A stretch of 63,990 bases of DNA, the filler included, from Octopus bimaculoides (lineage: Eukaryota), in assembly GCF_001194135.2 (NCBI RefSeq). It is 7 parts of 6 records of this genome, joined end to end, with 100 filler letters (N's around TTAATTAATTAA, not from the genome) between each part and the next. Parts side by side here need not be neighbours in the genome. Positions count along the whole stretch, not along the records: positions 52,031 to 57,323 come from NC_068984.1; 6 more parts are not named here. The stretch is one strand, 5' to 3'. Made by a program: the position numbers and the translations under genes. How positions within the stretch are numbered: position 1 is the first letter of the stretch; each line of letters begins with the position of its first letter. Shown piece by piece: positions 52,031 to 57,423 of the stretch. The notes under the pieces are model-generated. The model did not search any database. It saw only the letters and a program-made list of their open reading frames with translations, and had not been told where the DNA came from.

Positions 52031-52103
<73 letters not shown>

Positions 52104-52624
52104 AACCAAGACGAACATGAAGAGTACATTAAATACCATACAGTATAAATTCTTGATTGATTTAAATGATTTTATCTTCAAGAGCGTTTAGATCAACCGG
52201 TTACCGCACCAGCACCAAATGAGAAGAGGAGATAATCACAACAAACAAGAATTCTCAGAAATTTATATACCATGAAGGAAAACACAATTTGATTGCCTGA
52301 AGATAAGAGAACAACTGTGGACATATGTTTCTGCTTCAATAGACACCATCAGCACAAATATCGTCCTGTTTATATCAGCAGCAGATACGATGTTTGAATG
52401 GTATAACACGTTTGTGGCCTAAGCAATTTACGTCAAAGAAATGGAAATGATCTTTTATTATGAGAGTCGCTTACGATTGCTGCTATGCAAATTTCAATTC
52501 ACTGTCAAATTTTGCATACGTTATTCTGTACATCACCTACCTTACTTTAATTCACGCCAGTGACCCATTTTAATTATTTCCCTTTGCCCACATTTTACAC
52601 ACACACACACAGAAGTAAATAGAG

Positions 52625-52670
<46 letters not shown>

Positions 52671-53639
52671 ACAGAGAGAAGTACACATACACACGCATTC
52701 GCAGATAGAATAGTTCATCCGTAATCTCTTCCTTCACACTCACATACAGATACAAACATACCTACACATCCATATGTGTANNNNNNNNNNNNNNNNNNNN
52801 NNNNNNNNNNNNNNNNNNNNNNNNNNNNNNNNNNNNNNNNNNNNNNNNNNNNNNNNNNNNNNNNNNNNNNNNNNNNNNNNNNNNNNNNNNNNNNNNNNNN
52901 NNNNNNNNNNNNNNNNNNNNNNNNNNNNNNNNNNNNNNNNNNNNNNNNNNNNNNNNNNNNNNNNNNNNNNNNNNNNNNNNNNNNNNNNNNNNNNNNNNNN
53001 NNNNNNNNNNNNNNNNNNNNNNNNNNNNNNNNNNNNNNNNNNNNNNNNNNNNNNNNNNNNNNNNNNNNNNNNNNNNNNNNNNNNNNNNNNNNNNNNNNNN
53101 NNNNNNNNNNNNNNNNNNNNNNNNNNNNNNNNNNNNNNNNNNNNNNNNNNNNNNNNNNNNNNNNNNNNNNNNNNNNNNNNNNNNNNNNNNNNNNNNNNNN
53201 NNNNNNNNNNNNNNNNNNNNNNNNNNNNNNNNNNNNNNNNNNNNNNNNNNNNNNNNNNNNNNNNNNNNNNNNNNNNNNNNNNNNNNNNNNNNNNNNNNNN
53301 NNNNNNNNAGAATTGCGCGAAACATTACACAAATGTGTAGAATGATCAGGTAGTGTTGCTGGGCTTTGTATTTTTTTCATAGCACCCGTGGTTACCGAGA
53401 TAATCTACTATAATAATACTCTTGTGTTTATGAATGAGAAAGGAAGGGGTGATAGATGAATAAGGAAGGAAGGGGTAATGTCATACTTGGTAGTGGGATG
53501 ATGAAAATAGTACGCTGGAAAAAATAAATCAAACAGCGTTTCAACTCTGTGTGAATATATGTGTGTGTATGTAAAAGGGGGTATGTAAATGTGCGTGTGC
53601 GTGTGTGTGTGTGTGTTTGTGTTTGTGTGCGTGTGTGCG

Positions 53640-54125
53640 CGCAATGAAAGTGGGATTTTTTGTGAAGTCTTTGTAGTGTTTCAGTTATTTGTCTTTCAGT
53701 TTCAGATGGTTTTTTTTTTATTTTGGTTTTTTAAATTTTGTGTAATATTTCGCTTTGAGGTTGAGGTATTTAATGTTTTTCAGTCATTATATTTTCGTTG
53801 TTTTTTAACCTTTGAAAATTTAAAAGATCTTTGGCCTATTTTTTTTTATTTCTTTTAATTTTTAGTTTATTTTTTATGTTTGTTTCTGTTGTTTTGCATC
53901 TTTGTTCGATTACTATTTGGGTTTATTTTTTTAATTTGGTTGAATCTTGGCTGTTTTTTTGTTTTTTTTTGCTGGTCATTTATTTTTAGCATTTTGACAG
54001 AAAAAAAGTCATTCTAAAATTGTTTTTTAACGTAAGCGTGCCCAAACAAGTCGAATGCTTACACAGAACAGGTTTTACAGCCACATCATCCAAACCGACC
54101 GGGTGAAACCGGGCTTAGCTGCTAG
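53640..54125 (+). mobile_element. Non-autonomous Helitron-like element (3' end clear, 5' end uncertain)
   Basis: CCGG-GTGAAA-CCGG hairpin at 54099-54112 followed by CTAG|T at 54122-54126. Confidence 0.65.
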
Positions 54126-54157
<32 letters not shown>

Positions 54158-54173
54158 TTTTATTTTTTTTATT

Positions 54174-54394
54174 CAGGGTTGGCCAAAAGTCACTCTACAG
54201 TAAATCAAAATTCCATAGATACTATTTGCAATTCTATACTGACTCGAATGGAAAAATGTGTCGCTCAGTTTTAACAATTTTCATGATGTTTCATATTTAG
54301 ATGCTTTTATTAAATTCATACAGTTGTTAAACATGAATAAAACTTGGAATTAAATGGTTTTGATTTACTGTCAGGTGACTTTTGGCCGACCCTG
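54174..54394. mobile_element. Tc1/mariner-type MITE
   Basis: 20-bp TIRs CAGGGTTGGCCAAAAGTCAC / GTGACTTTTGGCCGACCCTG (1 mismatch); TA on the right flank. Confidence 0.88.
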
Positions 54395-54483
54395 TATATA
54401 TACCTATTTTCCCACACACACCGCTCCAGTGCTTTCTTGTTCTCACGTTTCTGCTCTTTAATTATTATCTCTCTCTTTTCTTT

Positions 54484-54515
<32 letters not shown>

Positions 54516-54871
54516 ACACACACACACACACACACACACACATGCATTTCGTACACATATATACACACACATATATACTTACCCACATATGCTATGCATC
54601 TCTATCTCACACCCACACGCACATACTCTCTTTTTGTCACACTTATGCTTTCCTTCTCTCTCTTTCTCTCTCTCTCTCTTTGTCTTTCGGGTTCTCTCTC
54701 TCTCCATTCTCCTCTCTCTCTTTCTTTCTCTCAGTCTCTGTCAGTCTCTCTTACTCATGGAATTTCTTGTTACGTGTCATTTCTCTCGCTATAGTTCATA
54801 CGCACGCATACACAAACATCACACACGCATACACTCATAAATGCTTTCTCTTGTCTCTTTCAAAGTCCTAA

Positions 54872-54909
<38 letters not shown>

Positions 54910-55104
54910 GCACACATATACTCAAACACACAGAGGGTTTCTACTGGTTTCTTACGATTTCATTCTTGTGTGTGTGTGTATTGCCACACACACGGTTACA
55001 CACACACACACACACACACACACTTCCTCGTCTTTTCTCTGTATTTCATTATAATTGAGACATATACACATACAAATATACGTAACACAGACGTTCTCTG
55101 TGTG

Positions 55105-55157
<53 letters not shown>

Positions 55158-55159
<2 letters not shown>

Positions 55160-55530
55160 GCGTGGTACCTTGGGCAAGTGTCTCCCATTATAGCCTCTAG
55201 CTGACCAAAGCCGATAAGTGAACTTGGTAGACGGAAACTGAAAGAAGCCCGTTGTATATGCATGTGTGTGTGCGTGTGTGTGCGTCTTTGTGTCTGCCCT
55301 TTACCACCATTTGACAACCGGTATTGGTGTGTTTACGTCCCCGTAACATAGCTGTTTGACAAAAGAGATCGATAGAATAAGTACCAAGTTTTGCAAAAAA
55401 CAAAACAAAGCAAAAAAACAAAAACAAAAGTACGGGGGTTGATTCGTCCAACTAAAATTCTTCAAGGCAGTACTCTAGCATGGCCGCAGTCTAATAGCTG
55501 AAACAAGCAAACGATAAAACATAAAAGATC
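55158..55530 (+). mobile_element. SINE family B copy (5'-truncated)
   Basis: CTGCGTGGTACCTTGGGCAAG...GGTAGACGGAAACTGAAAGAAGCCCG...GCATGGCCGCAGTC...CTGAAAC. Confidence 0.85.
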
Positions 55531-56402
55531 TATCTATCTCTCTATCTCTTGCACGTGATACACAGTTACTCCCTAATACTTCACTTTCTCTTACACACAC
55601 ACACAAACACACACACACTGTCTCTCTTTCTCACTCTCTCTCTCTCTCTCTCTCTCTCTCACGCACACACATACATATACACACTCACACACACAGGCTC
55701 AAACATTTCCTTTCCCTCATGCTACTTTTTAATTATACTTAATTAACACTTTAGTTTTAGTACATGATATTATTTTCTTAAATTTCGATTGGTTAATTAC
55801 TTCGTTAAATTCCACCAATCTCTCCTTACCCTTTCTCGTCAACTTCCACATATCGCCAAAGGCGCAATTCCCCCACCCACGCTCACACACACACACACAC
55901 ACACACTACCACTATTCTGTTACAGTGTTTTCTCAGTTTACCATTTCAGATCCTTCGTTCATCACTCAAGTCGCCGAATGACGGAGTTTGTTGTGTTACG
56001 TGTAGATTTTGCAGTGTGTGTGTATGTGTGTGTGTGTGTATGTGTGTGTGTGTGTGTATAAGTGTCTGTGTTTGTGTGTGTGTGCGTGTATGTGTATATT
56101 TCACCATCACCAACATACTATTATCATCATCATCATCACCATCACCACCACCACCGCCACAGCCGCCACCATCAGCACCATCAGCACCACCGCCACAGCC
56201 GCCNNNNNNNNNNNNNNNNNNNNNNNNNNNNNNNNNNNNNNNNNNNNNNNNNNNNNNNNNNNNNNNNNNNNNNNNNNNNNNNNNNNNNNNNNNNNNNNNN
56301 NNNNNNNNNNNNNNNNNNNNNNNNNNNNNNNNNNNNNNNNNACCACCACCACCACCACCACAGCATTAGAGGTTCTTGGCCCTTATTCCTATCGATGTAG
56401 AT

Positions 56403-56669
56403 GTTCTAACGAATCCAGGTAAAAAAAAATCACAGTGGGTGTCCTGGGGGGGATTTAGTCCGGATCCCATAAATTGTGACGTTTTTCCTGTAACTTTATA
56501 ACCGGTCATCATAAACTAATTGTGACTTTTTTCCTAGCCAAAATTGTGACTTTTTTCCTAGCCAAAATTGTGACTTCTTCCTAGCCAAAATTGTGACTTT
56601 TTTCCTAGCCAAAATTGTGACTTTTTCCTAGCCAAAACTGTGACTTTATTACTGGTCACCGTTCTAACG
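56403..56669. mobile_element. Small TIR-like element with internal 24-bp tandem array and candidate 8-9-bp TSD
   Basis: GTTCTAACG direct repeat at both ends; imperfect TIR CCAGGTAAAAAAAAATCACAG / CTGTGACTTTATTACTGG; 5 copies of AATTGTGACTTTTTTCCTAGCCAA at 56518-56647. Confidence 0.6.
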
Positions 56670-56800
56670 CCCTAGTCATATTTAGGACAATTTAGTTTCC
56701 TTTTTTGGTAAAACATTGCACACGGTTGTCTATATTAATTGCTTGAAAACACTTGAGCGATTCGTTAAATCATCCATAGATTTTTATGGTGAATTCATAT

Positions 56801-56940
56801 GTACTGACAGAGAATTAAATGCGGAATCAGCCGAATTGAGCGGTCCCTACTGATGAGGCTACGGAATTAGCCGAAACTGTCCGATCAGTATAGCGAATTT
56901 TCGACCGATGCTTTCGGACGATTACAGTTCTTGTCAGTGC
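56801..56940 (+). ncRNA. Canonical type I hammerhead ribozyme with long extended stem I
   Basis: CUA-CUGAUGA-GGCUA(CGGAAU)UAGCC-GAA-ACUG(UCCGAU)CAGU-A^UAG. All core nucleotides are intact, with four further helices extending stem I. Confidence 0.92.
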
Positions 56941-57224
56941 ATATATATACAATGATGCGCTTTAACTGCAATATTAGAGCTTTTACCTCTTATCTCTAGC
57001 AATGTAAGTGTATGTGTGTGTGTATTTATGTATATGTGTGTATGTATGTTTGTATGTATGTATGTATGTATCATTCAGAACAGAAAAAAGTGTTGCAGAT
57101 TGGTGTTGGGAATGTGATGATGATGATGACGTTTACTGTCTGCGTTTTCTATATGCTGTCTTCTCAGTTTTTTCGCGTCTCTTCTATTATTCAATTTTTT
57201 TAGCTCGTTATGCTATGTGGTTTA

Positions 57225-57275
57225 CGCCTGAAGAATATGTTTGAGTTCTCTCAACATATGAAACTATTAGTAGCG
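57225..57275 (+). ncRNA. Type I hammerhead ribozyme (short stems I and III)
   Basis: CGC-CUGAAGA-AUAUGUU..GAG(UUCU)CUC.AACAUAU-GAA-ACU(AUU)AGU-A^GCG. Confidence 0.7.
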
Positions 57276-57423
57276 CTTTAATATATGTATTGTGACCTTT
57301 AAATATATATATATATATATATANNNNNNNNNNNNNNNNNNNNNNNNNNNNNNNNNNNNNNNNNNNNTTAATTAATTAANNNNNNNNNNNNNNNNNNNNN
57401 NNNNNNNNNNNNNNNNNNNNNNN

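What the first reader, a model, noticed from the sequence alone, without database searches (positions are those of the whole stretch)
56801..56940. Intact canonical hammerhead ribozyme at the tip of a ~140-nt rod, with no parent element visible
Seen in sequence: the full HHR core is present. CUGAUGA is at 56850-56856, stem II is GGCUA/UAGCC (5 bp, loop CGGAAU), GAAA is at 56873-56876, stem III is ACUG/CAGU (loop UCCGAU), and the GUA cleavage triplet ends at 56890. Stem I is CUA/UAG, then an asymmetric internal loop (C versus CGAAUUUUC), then CGGUC/GACCG (56841-45/56903-07). It continues through CCGAA/UUCGG, AAUC/GAUU, AGAAUU/AGUUCU and GUACUGACA/UGUCAGUGC (56801-09/56932-40). Established: an internal loop in stem I docking onto loop II is the hallmark of fast natural type I HHRs, such as Schistosoma Sm-alpha, retrozymes and the amniote intronic HH9/HH10. 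Inference: every neighbouring transposon is heavily decayed but this structure is fully paired. It is therefore either a recent copy of an undescribed retrozyme/SINE-like family or a domesticated self-cleaving element in a host intron or UTR.
Basis: partly seen in the sequence, partly recalled or inferred. Interest (0 to 1): 0.9.

Follow-up and report, generated by a model that had tools for sequence, protein, structure and literature searches.

The report
Solitary hammerhead ribozyme in a hairpin
A complete-looking self-cutting RNA motif (a type I hammerhead ribozyme) sits at the tip of a roughly 148-base hairpin in repeat-rich eukaryotic DNA; it is most likely a stray single copy of the ribozyme-carrying small repeats already known from many animal genomes, so it is a nice but fairly ordinary find.

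Summary
This is not chance. My descriptor finds about 1 minimal hit per 8 Mb of composition-matched random sequence, none of this quality, and the arms pair far better than shuffles (z = -5.4).

Four caveats:
- Rfam gives only a sub-threshold hit (27.1 bits against 48.5), and to the wrong permutation.
- Nearest-neighbour folding prefers an unbranched rod that sequesters the core, by about 6 kcal/mol.
- The rod is about 61-66% paired, not "fully paired".
- The loop-loop docking is unverified.

There is one copy in the 5.3-kb piece: no tandem repeat, no coding remnant, and no relative in any collection I could search. New details:
- The left arm is a decayed duplicate of the ribozyme's 5' part.
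- A 13-nt terminal inverted repeat is flanked by TA/CATAT.
- A weak second hammerhead-like match lies 382 nt downstream.

Best reading: a solitary monomer of a small non-LTR retrozyme-like repeat. Rivals are a ribozyme-carrying MITE-like element and a domesticated ribozyme. It is a new member of a known kind, of moderate interest.

The parts
56797..56944 (+). Whole self-complementary unit (rod/hairpin) carrying the ribozyme. GC is 46%, against 34% in the flanks.
   Evidence: MFE -49.8 kcal/mol (z -4.45); arm duplex z -5.4; no second copy in the piece.
56847..56893 (+). Hammerhead catalytic domain, type I topology (helix I open, helices II and III capped by loops).
   Evidence: Sequence reading, pair list, own descriptor hit, partial Rfam Hammerhead_3 match at 27.1 bits.
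56850..56856 (+). Core box C3-A9 (CUGAUGA).
56857..56872 (+). Helix II: GGCUA/UAGCC, 5 bp with G10.1-C11.1, and 6-nt loop CGGAAU.
56873..56876 (+). Core box G12 A13 A14 A15.1 (GAAA).
56876..56889 (+). Helix III: ACUG/CAGU, 4 bp including A15.1-U16.1, with 6-nt loop UCCGAU. It is long enough to act as a monomer.
   Evidence: Comparison with helix III lengths in PMC7229834.
56890..56891 (+). Predicted scissile bond: after A17 (56890) of the GUA triplet and before U1.1 (56891).
   Evidence: Position in the motif. Activity was not tested.
56894..56902 (+). Asymmetric internal loop or bulge on the 3' strand of helix I (CGAAUUUUC, opposite C56846). It is a candidate 'loop 1' and contains a UUUU run.
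   Evidence: The constrained fold pairs C56846-G56895, leaving a 7-nt bulge.
56797..56846 (+). Left arm of the rod (5' strand of extended helix I). It is also a decayed duplicate of the ribozyme's 5' two-thirds: ACTGACAGAG at 56803-12 and CGGAATCAGCCGAA at 56822-35.
   Evidence: 13/14 identity to 56862-75, matched by 0 of 1000 shuffles.
56903..56944 (+). Right arm of the rod (3' strand of extended helix I).
56797..56809 (.). Terminal inverted repeat ATATGYACTGACA (12/13), partnered with 56932-56944. The direct repeat CATAT at 56796-56800 and 56940-56944 (or TA at 56798-99 and 56942-43) could be a target-site duplication or the junction redundancy of a 144-nt unit.
   Evidence: Ambiguous because the flanks are TA-rich.
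57225..57275 (+). Uncertain second hammerhead-like match: CUGAAGA at 57228-34; stem II AUAUGUU/AACAUAU; GAAA at 57260-63; stem III ACU/AGU with a 3-nt loop; GUA ending at 57272; stem I CGC/GCG. It lies 382 nt downstream of the first cleavage site.
   Evidence: about 6.6e-4 expected per piece. But there is no Rfam hit, the local fold has z -0.35, and it shows no homology to the first element.

Best explanation
The locus encodes a genuine type I hammerhead self-cleaving motif. Its helix I is prolonged by about 33 further base pairs into a self-contained rod of 144-148 nt. The most likely origin is a solitary (monomeric) genomic copy of a small ribozyme-bearing repeat of the non-LTR retrozyme type, that is, a cDNA copy of a rod-shaped hammerhead RNA.

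Mechanism (inferred, not shown):
- When the + strand is transcribed by read-through, helices II and III form first, and the hammerhead fold cuts the RNA between A56890 and U56891. This leaves a 2',3'-cyclic phosphate and a 5'-OH.
- The more stable unbranched rod then sequesters the core, through the helix UACUGAU 56848-54 / AUCAGUA 56884-90. This is the arrangement seen in viroid-like and retrozyme RNAs.
- With only one ribozyme copy here, this locus cannot release a unit-length RNA or a circle. It can only sever a host transcript, so this copy is probably an inert by-product of the family's spread.
- The left arm descends from a duplicated, now inactive, copy of the ribozyme's 5' part.
For: - The core and all three helices are intact, with no mismatch.
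- Chance is excluded. The descriptor null gives 22 hits per 176 Mb, none of this quality. Arm duplex z = -5.4. Fold z = -4.45.
- The + strand folds better than the - strand (-49.8 against -43.3 kcal/mol), and both G-U pairs of the rod are on the + strand. This fits RNA-level structure in the ribozyme's polarity.
- The hammerhead is perfect while the arms are only about 66% paired, which suggests constraint on the ribozyme (inference).
- GC is 46% and the unit is highly self-paired, as described for metazoan retrozymes (PMC7229834).
- Helix III is 4 bp plus a loop, like the invertebrate retrozyme hammerheads that cleave as monomers (PMC7229834).
- Monomeric, dispersed retrozyme derivatives are documented, and consensus lengths run from 51 to 972 bp (bioRxiv 10.64898/2026.07.22.740005).
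- The internal 40-45-nt duplication points to a repeat history.
- The 5-nt CATAT repeat at both ends fits either a short target-site duplication or slightly more than one turn of a 144-nt template.
Against: - The defining tandem arrangement is absent. There is one copy in 5.3 kb.
- No other family member was found anywhere I could search, so multicopy status is unknown.
- At 144-148 nt it is below the roughly 170-400 nt range reported for animal retrozyme RNAs (PMC7229834).
- The Rfam score is below threshold.
- The hammerhead fold is only about 1e-5 of the predicted ensemble. That model ignores tertiary contacts and co-transcriptional folding.
- The unit's ends coincide with the base of the rod. 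This is not expected for a random break point on a circular template, but it is what a terminal-inverted-repeat DNA element would show.
Confidence: 0.5

Rival explanations
1. It is a miniature inverted-repeat (MITE-like) DNA transposon that carries a hammerhead. The outer rod is simply its terminal inverted repeats, flanked by a TA (or CATAT) target duplication. The ribozyme sits in the central region and cuts any transcript that reads through the insertion.
For: - A 13-nt terminal inverted repeat ATATGYACTGACA (12/13), extendable to about 18 nt with one indel.
- TA dinucleotides directly outside TGYACTGACA on both sides.
- The length (about 145 bp) and the sharp coincidence of the element ends with the base of the hairpin are typical of MITEs.
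- It is a single dispersed copy rather than a tandem array.
Against: - The flanks are TA-rich microsatellite-like sequence, so a TA or CATAT repeat is weak evidence.
- The termini do not resemble the usual Tc1/mariner ends (my own knowledge, not tested).
- Complementarity continues well beyond the termini through the whole arm up to the ribozyme. It includes two G-U pairs on the ribozyme strand only, which fits RNA-level pairing.
- My literature search found no MITE with a hammerhead.
Confidence: 0.15
2. It is a single-copy, host-domesticated hammerhead in an intron or UTR, functionally analogous to the amniote intronic HH9/HH10 or the rodent Clec2 3'UTR ribozymes. It would regulate an mRNA by co-transcriptional cleavage.
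For: - The ribozyme is intact amid non-conserved, repeat-rich DNA.
- It is one copy only in the piece.
- Retrozyme-derived ribozymes are thought to have been co-opted this way (PMC3088659 discussion).
Against: - There is no exon, ORF or protein similarity anywhere in the 5.3 kb.
- I had no orthologous sequence to show conservation.
- The surroundings are microsatellites and assembly gaps.
- The prior is low, because such cases are a handful against thousands of repeat-borne copies.
Confidence: 0.1
3. The two hammerhead-like motifs (cleavage after 56890 and after 57272, same strand) work together as the ends of a 382-nt unit. That unit would be excised and could be circularised. It would be a retrozyme-like element with two unrelated ribozymes.
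For: - The second motif satisfies the full consensus, including pairs adjacent to the core.
- A second hit in the same 5.3 kb is expected only about 6.6e-4 times under the Markov null.
- The 382-nt spacing lies within the 170-400 nt retrozyme range (PMC7229834).
Against: - No Rfam signal for the second motif.
- Its local fold is no better than shuffles, z -0.35.
- Helix I is only 3 bp with no extension. Helix III is 3 bp with a 3-nt loop, and helix II is A-U rich with A10.1-U11.1.
- It has no sequence homology to the first element.
- The 382-nt interval folded as a circle is no more structured than shuffles (z -0.4), and it contains a (TG/TATG)n microsatellite.
- A Markov null understates the number of hairpins in real AT-rich DNA.
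Confidence: 0.07
4. It is a catalytically dead look-alike. The motif is present but the RNA is trapped in the unbranched rod, or lacks the tertiary contacts, and never cleaves. It would be a relic, or a structured repeat that merely resembles a hammerhead.
For: - The competing rod is about 6 kcal/mol more stable, and the hammerhead fold is about 1e-5 of the ensemble, even for the isolated 47-nt domain.
- The Rfam score is below the gathering threshold.
- Proximal helix I is only 3 bp.
- Four of 18 consensus-conforming candidates were inactive in Perreault et al. 2011 (PMC3088659).
Against: - All invariant nucleotides and all helix pairs are intact, which is very unlikely by chance or after neutral decay.
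- Nearest-neighbour models ignore core and loop-loop tertiary energy.
- Stable inactive rods coexisting with transiently active hammerheads are the rule in viroid-like RNAs (established knowledge).
Confidence: 0.12

Closest known systems
Metazoan non-LTR retrozymes (type I hammerhead repeats; Cervera & de la Pena 2020, PMC7229834), including their solitary 'monomer' derivatives (bioRxiv 10.64898/2026.07.22.740005)
   Same: - Type I hammerhead.
- Stable helix III, as in invertebrate members.
- Helix I continuing into a highly self-paired rod.
- GC below 50%.
- No coding capacity, and no LTR, PBS or PPT.
- Dispersed monomers are documented.
   Different: - Not in a tandem array here.
- The 144-148 nt unit is shorter than the reported ~170-400 nt RNAs.
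- The unit ends fall at the base of the rod, with a terminal inverted repeat.
- Copy number and circular RNA are unknown.
- No sequence relative was found.
Schistosoma Sm-alpha hammerhead (type I, SINE-like repeat)
   Same: - Type I topology.
- 6-nt loop II.
- An internal loop in helix I that could serve as the docking partner.
- Repeat-borne.
   Different: - No tRNA-like or pol III head was detected.
- The helix I bulge lies on the 3' strand, after only 3-4 bp.
- There is no sequence similarity beyond the core.
- The hairpin-shaped unit is unlike Sm-alpha.
Penelope-like element pLTR hammerheads (minimal type I, acting as dimers)
   Same: Type I topology and association with retroelement spread. 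The proposed parents of animal retrozymes.
   Different: - Here helix III is 4 bp plus a 6-nt loop, not the 0-2 bp of minimal variants.
- There is no tandem ribozyme pair.
- There is no RT or GIY-YIG remnant in the piece.
Hammerhead viroid-like RNAs and small circular satellite RNAs
   Same: - A rod-like most-stable fold that hides the ribozyme.
- A transient active fold.
- Small size.
   Different: - This is genomic DNA.
- The ribozyme is in one polarity only. My descriptor finds none on the - strand.
- It is smaller than any known viroid-like RNA (my knowledge: about 220 nt and up).
Amniote intronic HH9/HH10 (Rfam RF02275/RF02277)
   Same: Type I hammerhead with a 6-nt loop II of similar flavour (CGGAAU here; I recall CAAAUA in those, from memory).
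   Different: - The best Rfam clan member is not HH9 or HH10, and nothing reaches threshold.
- No genic context or orthologues were available.

Membership tests
Hammerhead ribozyme (class) | Invariant core: C3 U4 G5 A6 N7 G8 A9, G12 A13 A14, A15.1-U16.1, H17 (not G) | tested here: met
   CUGAUGA at 56850-56, GAAA at 56873-76, A56876-U56889, A17 = 56890.
Hammerhead ribozyme (class) | Three helices with standard pairs directly adjacent to the core (10.1-11.1, 1.1-2.1, 15.1-16.1; criterion of Perreault et al. 2011) | tested here: met
   G56857-C56872, A56849-U56891, A56876-U56889. Stems I/II/III are 3(+1+5...)/5/4 bp with no mismatch.
Hammerhead ribozyme (class) | Reaches the curated Rfam covariance-model threshold of a hammerhead family (clan CL00010) | tested here: not met
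   The only match is Hammerhead_3 at 27.1 bits against a gathering score of 48.5, E = 4.4e-4 in a 181-nt search. It aligns the core and helix II in the wrong permutation. No better clan member was reported.
Hammerhead ribozyme (class) | Site-specific Mg2+-dependent self-cleavage | not testable with these tools
   Needs in vitro transcription of 56795-56945.
Hammerhead ribozyme (class) | The active secondary structure is thermodynamically accessible | tested here: inconclusive
   The hammerhead-constrained fold is -43.5 against an MFE of -49.0 kcal/mol, about 1e-5 of the ensemble. The model omits tertiary energy and kinetics.
Type I hammerhead | Helix I open-ended, helices II and III closed by loops | tested here: met
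   Loops CGGAAU and UCCGAU close helices II and III. Both RNA ends leave through helix I.
Canonical (fast) type I hammerhead | Conserved tertiary contacts between an internal loop of helix I and loop II | tested here: inconclusive
   A 1 x 9 internal loop (or a 1-nt plus a 7-nt bulge) and a 6-nt loop II are present. I could not check their contact nucleotides against a consensus. Some bona fide retrozyme hammerheads (mussel) lack them (PMC7229834).
Non-LTR retrozyme | Head-to-tail tandem repeats, each unit with a type I hammerhead | tested here: not met
   TRF and self-BLAST find no second copy in 52031-57323. The downstream hammerhead-like match is not homologous. Only the 'monomer derivative' category could apply.
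Non-LTR retrozyme | Multicopy family in the genome, co-occurring with Penelope-like elements | not testable with these tools
   The source genome is not available. No relative was found in the viral, metagenome or prokaryote-genome collections.
Non-LTR retrozyme | Unit RNA highly self-paired, GC below 50%, non-coding | tested here: met
   Fold z = -4.45; arm duplex z = -5.4; 61% paired as a 144-nt circle; GC 46%; no ORF of significance.
Non-LTR retrozyme | Unit size about 170-400 nt (PMC7229834); 51-972 bp in the 2026 survey | tested here: inconclusive
   At 144-148 nt it is below the first range and inside the second.
Non-LTR retrozyme | Expressed as linear and circular RNA | not testable with these tools
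   No transcriptome data.
Penelope-like element pLTR hammerhead | Minimal hammerhead with a vestigial helix III, in tandem pairs, next to an RT/GIY-YIG ORF | tested here: not met
   Helix III is 4 bp plus a 6-nt loop. It is a single copy. Six-frame translation of the piece shows only low-complexity, stop-rich frames. The assembly gaps at 52781-53308 and 56204-56341 leave a little room.
MITE (non-autonomous DNA transposon) | Terminal inverted repeats | tested here: met
   ATATGTACTGACA at 56797-809 against 56932-944, 12/13. The 18-nt alignment scored better than all 1000 shuffles.
MITE (non-autonomous DNA transposon) | Target-site duplication of fixed length, and many copies with identical ends | tested here: inconclusive
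   TA and CATAT are repeated at both ends, but in TA-rich flanks. Copies elsewhere could not be examined.
Sm-alpha-like SINE | tRNA-derived or pol III promoter head | tested here: not met
   ARAGORN finds no tRNA-like sequence in the piece. I saw no convincing A or B boxes by eye.

The most novel reading that the evidence does not exclude
The 144-148-nt hairpin is the complete unit of an undescribed class of hammerhead carrier. It could be the smallest retrozyme or viroid-like circle yet seen: a 144-nt rod with an AUAU tetraloop at one end and an on/off switch built from the 7-bp alternative helix. Or it could be the first DNA-transposon-type (MITE) element that carries a self-cleaving ribozyme.
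Probability: 0.15. Interest if true: 0.65.

Novelty: new member of a known kind. Interest (0 to 1): 0.35.

Why it matters
If the ribozyme is active, this adds a hammerhead that standard Rfam annotation would miss, because it scores below threshold. It would also be an unusually compact, self-contained ribozyme hairpin with a built-in competing rod fold.

If the family turns out to be multicopy with these exact ends, it would extend the lower size limit of retrozyme-like elements, or link hammerheads to DNA transposons for the first time.

If it is just one stray monomer of a known kind of repeat, it is an ordinary piece of the already large catalogue of animal genomic hammerheads.

Tried and rejected
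1. Searching for relatives by DNA pattern:
- The strict family pattern CTACTGATGAGGCTA-N6-TAGCCGAAACTG gave 0 hits in metagenome and prokaryote-genome contigs.
- The core plus helix II pattern in viral contigs gave 6 unrelated phage hammerheads.
- The looser pattern with this helix III gave 0 viral hits, 59 metagenome hits and 9 genome hits. All were unrelated phage or bacterial hammerheads, chance matches, or a separate JAAUYA/JAAUXW family.
- The helix I/core 18-mer gave 0 hits.
- The terminal-repeat pattern gave 65 chance hits, none with a partner repeat or a core.
- blastn against phage genomes gave no match.

2. Reaching eukaryotic assemblies through spurious ORFs that cross the element:
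- Two exact look-ups found nothing on record.
- One homology search found no candidate.

3. Full-text and supplement searches for the ribozyme's sequence strings found nothing.

4. A tRNA-like or pol III head was not found.

5. Bacterial promoter and terminator scans were uninformative.

The translations are plainly low-complexity, stop-rich, non-coding sequence, so I did not pursue it.

7. The idea that the downstream hammerhead-like motif is a diverged tandem copy was rejected. There is no homology, and the interval has no structure.

8. The 12/13 match between TAGCCGAAACTGT (56868-80) and the 24-nt tandem repeat (56629-41) was judged to be chance (E = 2.2).

Full report
**Observation**

I read 56700-57323 directly and listed every proposed pair by script.
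- CUGAUGA at 56850-56.
- Helix II GGCUA/UAGCC (56857-61/56868-72), with loop CGGAAU.
- GAAA at 56873-76.
- Helix III ACUG/CAGU (56876-79/56886-89), with loop UCCGAU.
- The GUA triplet ending at A56890.
- Helix I CUA/UAG (56847-49/56891-93), then C opposite CGAAUUUUC, then CGGUC/GACCG (56841-45/56903-07).
- Outward from there: CCGAA/UUCGG, AAUC/GAUU, AGAAUU/AGUUCU and GUACUGACA/UGUCAGUGC.

Pairing continues four more base pairs (AUAU/AUAU), to 56797/56944. Both RNA ends leave through helix I, so the topology is type I.

**Is it chance?**

I wrote a hammerhead descriptor. It requires the invariant core, H17 not G, standard pairs next to the core, and stems I>=3, II>=4 and III>=3 with loops of at least 3 nt.
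- In 176 Mb of first-order Markov sequence with the piece's own composition, scanned on both strands, it gave 22 hits. That is about 1 per 8 Mb, or 6.6e-4 per 5.3-kb piece.
- Only 3 of the 22 had stems as long as here, and none of those had the usual G10.1-C11.1 pair.
- Independently, the two 50-nt arms form a -39.3 kcal/mol duplex (z = -5.4; matched by 0 of 1000 shuffles).
- The 151-nt stretch folds at -49.8 kcal/mol (z = -4.45).

The combination is far beyond chance, even for a gigabase genome.

**Caveats on the ribozyme**

1. Rfam. The only hammerhead-clan match is Hammerhead_3 at 27.1 bits. The gathering score is 48.5. The match aligns just the core and helix II, in the wrong circular permutation. 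Routine annotation would therefore miss this locus, and membership by that criterion fails.

2. Folding. The minimum-free-energy fold is not the hammerhead.
- A 7-bp helix, UACUGAU (56848-54) with AUCAGUA (56884-90), plus two short helices, turns the whole 148 nt into one unbranched rod.
- The hammerhead-constrained fold is about 5.5-6.5 kcal/mol worse and makes up about 1e-5 of the predicted ensemble. This holds even for the isolated 47-nt domain.
- Nearest-neighbour models ignore the core's non-canonical pairs, loop-loop contacts and co-transcriptional folding.
- A stable inactive rod alongside a transiently active hammerhead is normal for viroid-like RNAs. I therefore read this as a possible on/off arrangement rather than as disproof. 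It does keep an inactive look-alike on the table.

3. Pairing. The rod is about 66% paired in the arms (61% of all bases as a 144-nt circle), not 'fully paired'.

4. Docking. An internal loop in helix I and a 6-nt loop II exist, but I could not test whether they carry the conserved docking nucleotides.

**Context**

The piece (52031-57323) is eukaryotic-looking, non-coding DNA.
- It holds dozens of microsatellites and two assembly gaps, at 52781-53308 and 56204-56341.
- It has no ORF other than low-complexity or gap artefacts.
- It has no tRNA-like sequence.
- The 148-mer occurs once. There is no tandem repeat of it and no diverged second copy on either strand.
- Its GC content (46%) stands out from the flanks (34%).

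**New anatomical details**

(a) The left arm is a decayed duplicate of the ribozyme's 5' two-thirds.
- CGGAATCAGCCGAA (56822-35) matches CGGAATTAGCCGAA (56862-75) at 13 of 14 positions, matched by 0 of 1000 shuffles.
- ACTGACAGAG (56803-12) parallels ACTGATGAGG (56848-57), at an offset of 40-45 nt.
- So the unit has a history of internal tandem duplication.

(b) The ends form a 13-nt inverted repeat, ATATGYACTGACA (12/13).
- TA sits immediately outside TGYACTGACA on both sides.
- Equivalently, there is a 5-nt direct repeat CATAT at 56796-800 and 56940-44.
- This can be read in three ways: a TA duplication of a MITE, a short target-site duplication, or the overlap of slightly more than one turn of a 144-nt template whose far end closes with an AUAU tetraloop.
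- The TA-rich flanks make all three readings weak.

(c) Both G-U pairs of the rod lie on the ribozyme strand, and the + strand folds 6.5 kcal/mol better than the - strand. This is mild support for RNA-level structure in that polarity.

**A second hammerhead-like match**

My descriptor also hit the + strand at 57225-57275:
- CUGAAGA at 57228-34.
- Helix II AUAUGUU/AACAUAU.
- GAAA at 57260-63.
- Helix III ACU/AGU with a 3-nt loop.
- GUA ending at 57272.
- Helix I CGC/GCG.

It lies 382 nt after the first cleavage site. Under the Markov null a second hit in the piece is expected only about 6.6e-4 times. However:
- It has no Rfam signal.
- Its local fold is no better than shuffles (z -0.35).
- It shows no homology to the first element.
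- It has no helix I extension.
- The 382-nt interval folded as a circle is unstructured (z -0.4) and contains a microsatellite.

I treat it as unexplained and probably fortuitous, and I list a two-ribozyme unit as a low-probability rival.

**Relatives**

None could be found, and this is the main limitation.
- The collections I could scan by DNA are viral, metagenomic and prokaryotic.
- Strict and loose patterns returned only unrelated phage and bacterial hammerheads, chance matches, and one separate repeat family.
- Attempts to reach eukaryotic assemblies through spurious ORFs crossing the element also failed.
- Text searches for the sequence in papers and supplements found nothing.

Copy number, covariation, insertion polymorphism and host identity therefore remain untested.

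**Interpretation**

From the literature:
- Most type I hammerheads of animal genomes sit in small non-coding repeats, the non-LTR retrozymes. These are expressed as highly self-paired linear and circular RNAs of about 170-400 nt.
- Invertebrate members have a stable helix III and cleave as monomers (PMC7229834).
- A 2026 survey reports family consensus lengths of 51-972 bp, proportions of solitary 'monomer' copies from 0 to 1, even dispersal of monomers along chromosomes, and descent from Penelope-like element termini (bioRxiv 10.64898/2026.07.22.740005).

The present locus matches these elements in ribozyme type, helix III, self-pairing, GC content and lack of coding. It fails the defining tandem arrangement, and it is small.

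I therefore file it as a probable solitary monomer of such a family (confidence about 0.5), not as a demonstrated member.

The proposed mechanism is read-through transcription, co-transcriptional cleavage after A56890, then collapse into the inactive rod. All steps of it are inferred. A lone ribozyme cannot release a unit or form a circle, so this copy is likely inert.

Rivals:
- A hammerhead-carrying MITE-like element (0.15).
- A domesticated single-copy ribozyme (0.10).
- An inactive look-alike (0.12).
- The two-ribozyme unit (0.07).

**Novelty and score**

This is a new member of a known kind.
- It is interesting for three reasons: Rfam misses it, the unit is unusually compact and self-contained, and it has a clear competing fold.
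- Against that, genomic type I hammerheads and their stray monomers are well described.
- Interest: 0.35.
- The most novel reading still open is a new ultra-small retrozyme or viroid-like unit, or the first ribozyme-bearing DNA transposon. I give it a probability of about 0.15.

Noticed in passing
window 57225-57275 (+): A second sequence satisfies the full hammerhead consensus (CUGAAGA ... GAAA ... GUA, stems I/II/III of 3/7/3 bp). It lies 382 nt downstream of the first cleavage site on the same strand. It is statistically unexpected (about 6.6e-4 per piece). But it is thermodynamically weak, has no Rfam hit, and is not homologous to the first element.
   Followed up: yes
window 56819-56837 vs 56859-56877, and 56803-12 vs 56848-57: There is an internal direct repeat. 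The left arm of the rod is a decayed copy of the ribozyme's core box, loop II and 3' strand of helix II (13/14 identity in the best block).
   Followed up: yes
window 56848-56854 / 56884-56890: A 7-bp alternative helix (UACUGAU/AUCAGUA) pairs the catalytic core with the 3' strand of helix III and the cleavage-site A. It turns the whole unit into an unbranched rod that is about 6 kcal/mol more stable than the active fold.
   Followed up: yes
window 56471-56653: A 24-nt minisatellite (AATTGTGACTTTTTTCCTAGCCAA) has about 5.5 tandem copies at 56518-56647 (93% matches), plus an isolated partial copy at 56471-89. It lies about 150 nt upstream of the ribozyme hairpin. Its 12/13 match to TAGCCGAAACTGT of the ribozyme looks fortuitous (E = 2.2).
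   Followed up: partly
window 52031-57323: Microsatellite density is extreme. (TG)n, (GA)n, (TC)n, (CA)n, (TCTA)n, (TGTA)n, (CAC)n and (AT)n occur every few hundred bases. Two assembly gaps (N runs) lie at 52781-53308 and 56204-56341. The piece is a draft eukaryotic scaffold, and the species is not identifiable with the tools.
   Followed up: partly
window 56898-56901: A UUUU run sits in the helix I bulge, 8-11 nt after the predicted cleavage site. If the unit were transcribed by RNA polymerase III, this could act as a terminator before the right arm. This is pure speculation.
   Followed up: no
L008, L009, L011, L018, L024, L027, L036, L038-L041, L044, L051, L057 (metagenome assemblies JAAUYA01/JAAUXW01): A multicopy family unrelated to the finding carries CUGAUGAG-helix II-CGAAACUG...CAGUU.
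- A compensatory C-G to U-A change in helix II occurs in 3 of 13 copies.
- The flanks are conserved (…TATTCCGGGCGGCC… upstream and GAATCAATGTCATC downstream).
- There is no standard 1.1-2.1 pair, and helix I seems shifted by one nucleotide.

It is possibly a variant hammerhead repeat of an uncharacterised organism.
   Followed up: partly
L001, L002, L004, L006 (IMG/VR contigs): Near-identical phage hammerheads share this ribozyme's helix II sequence (GGCUA...UAGCC) by coincidence. They sit just upstream of a ribosome-binding site and start codon.
   Followed up: no
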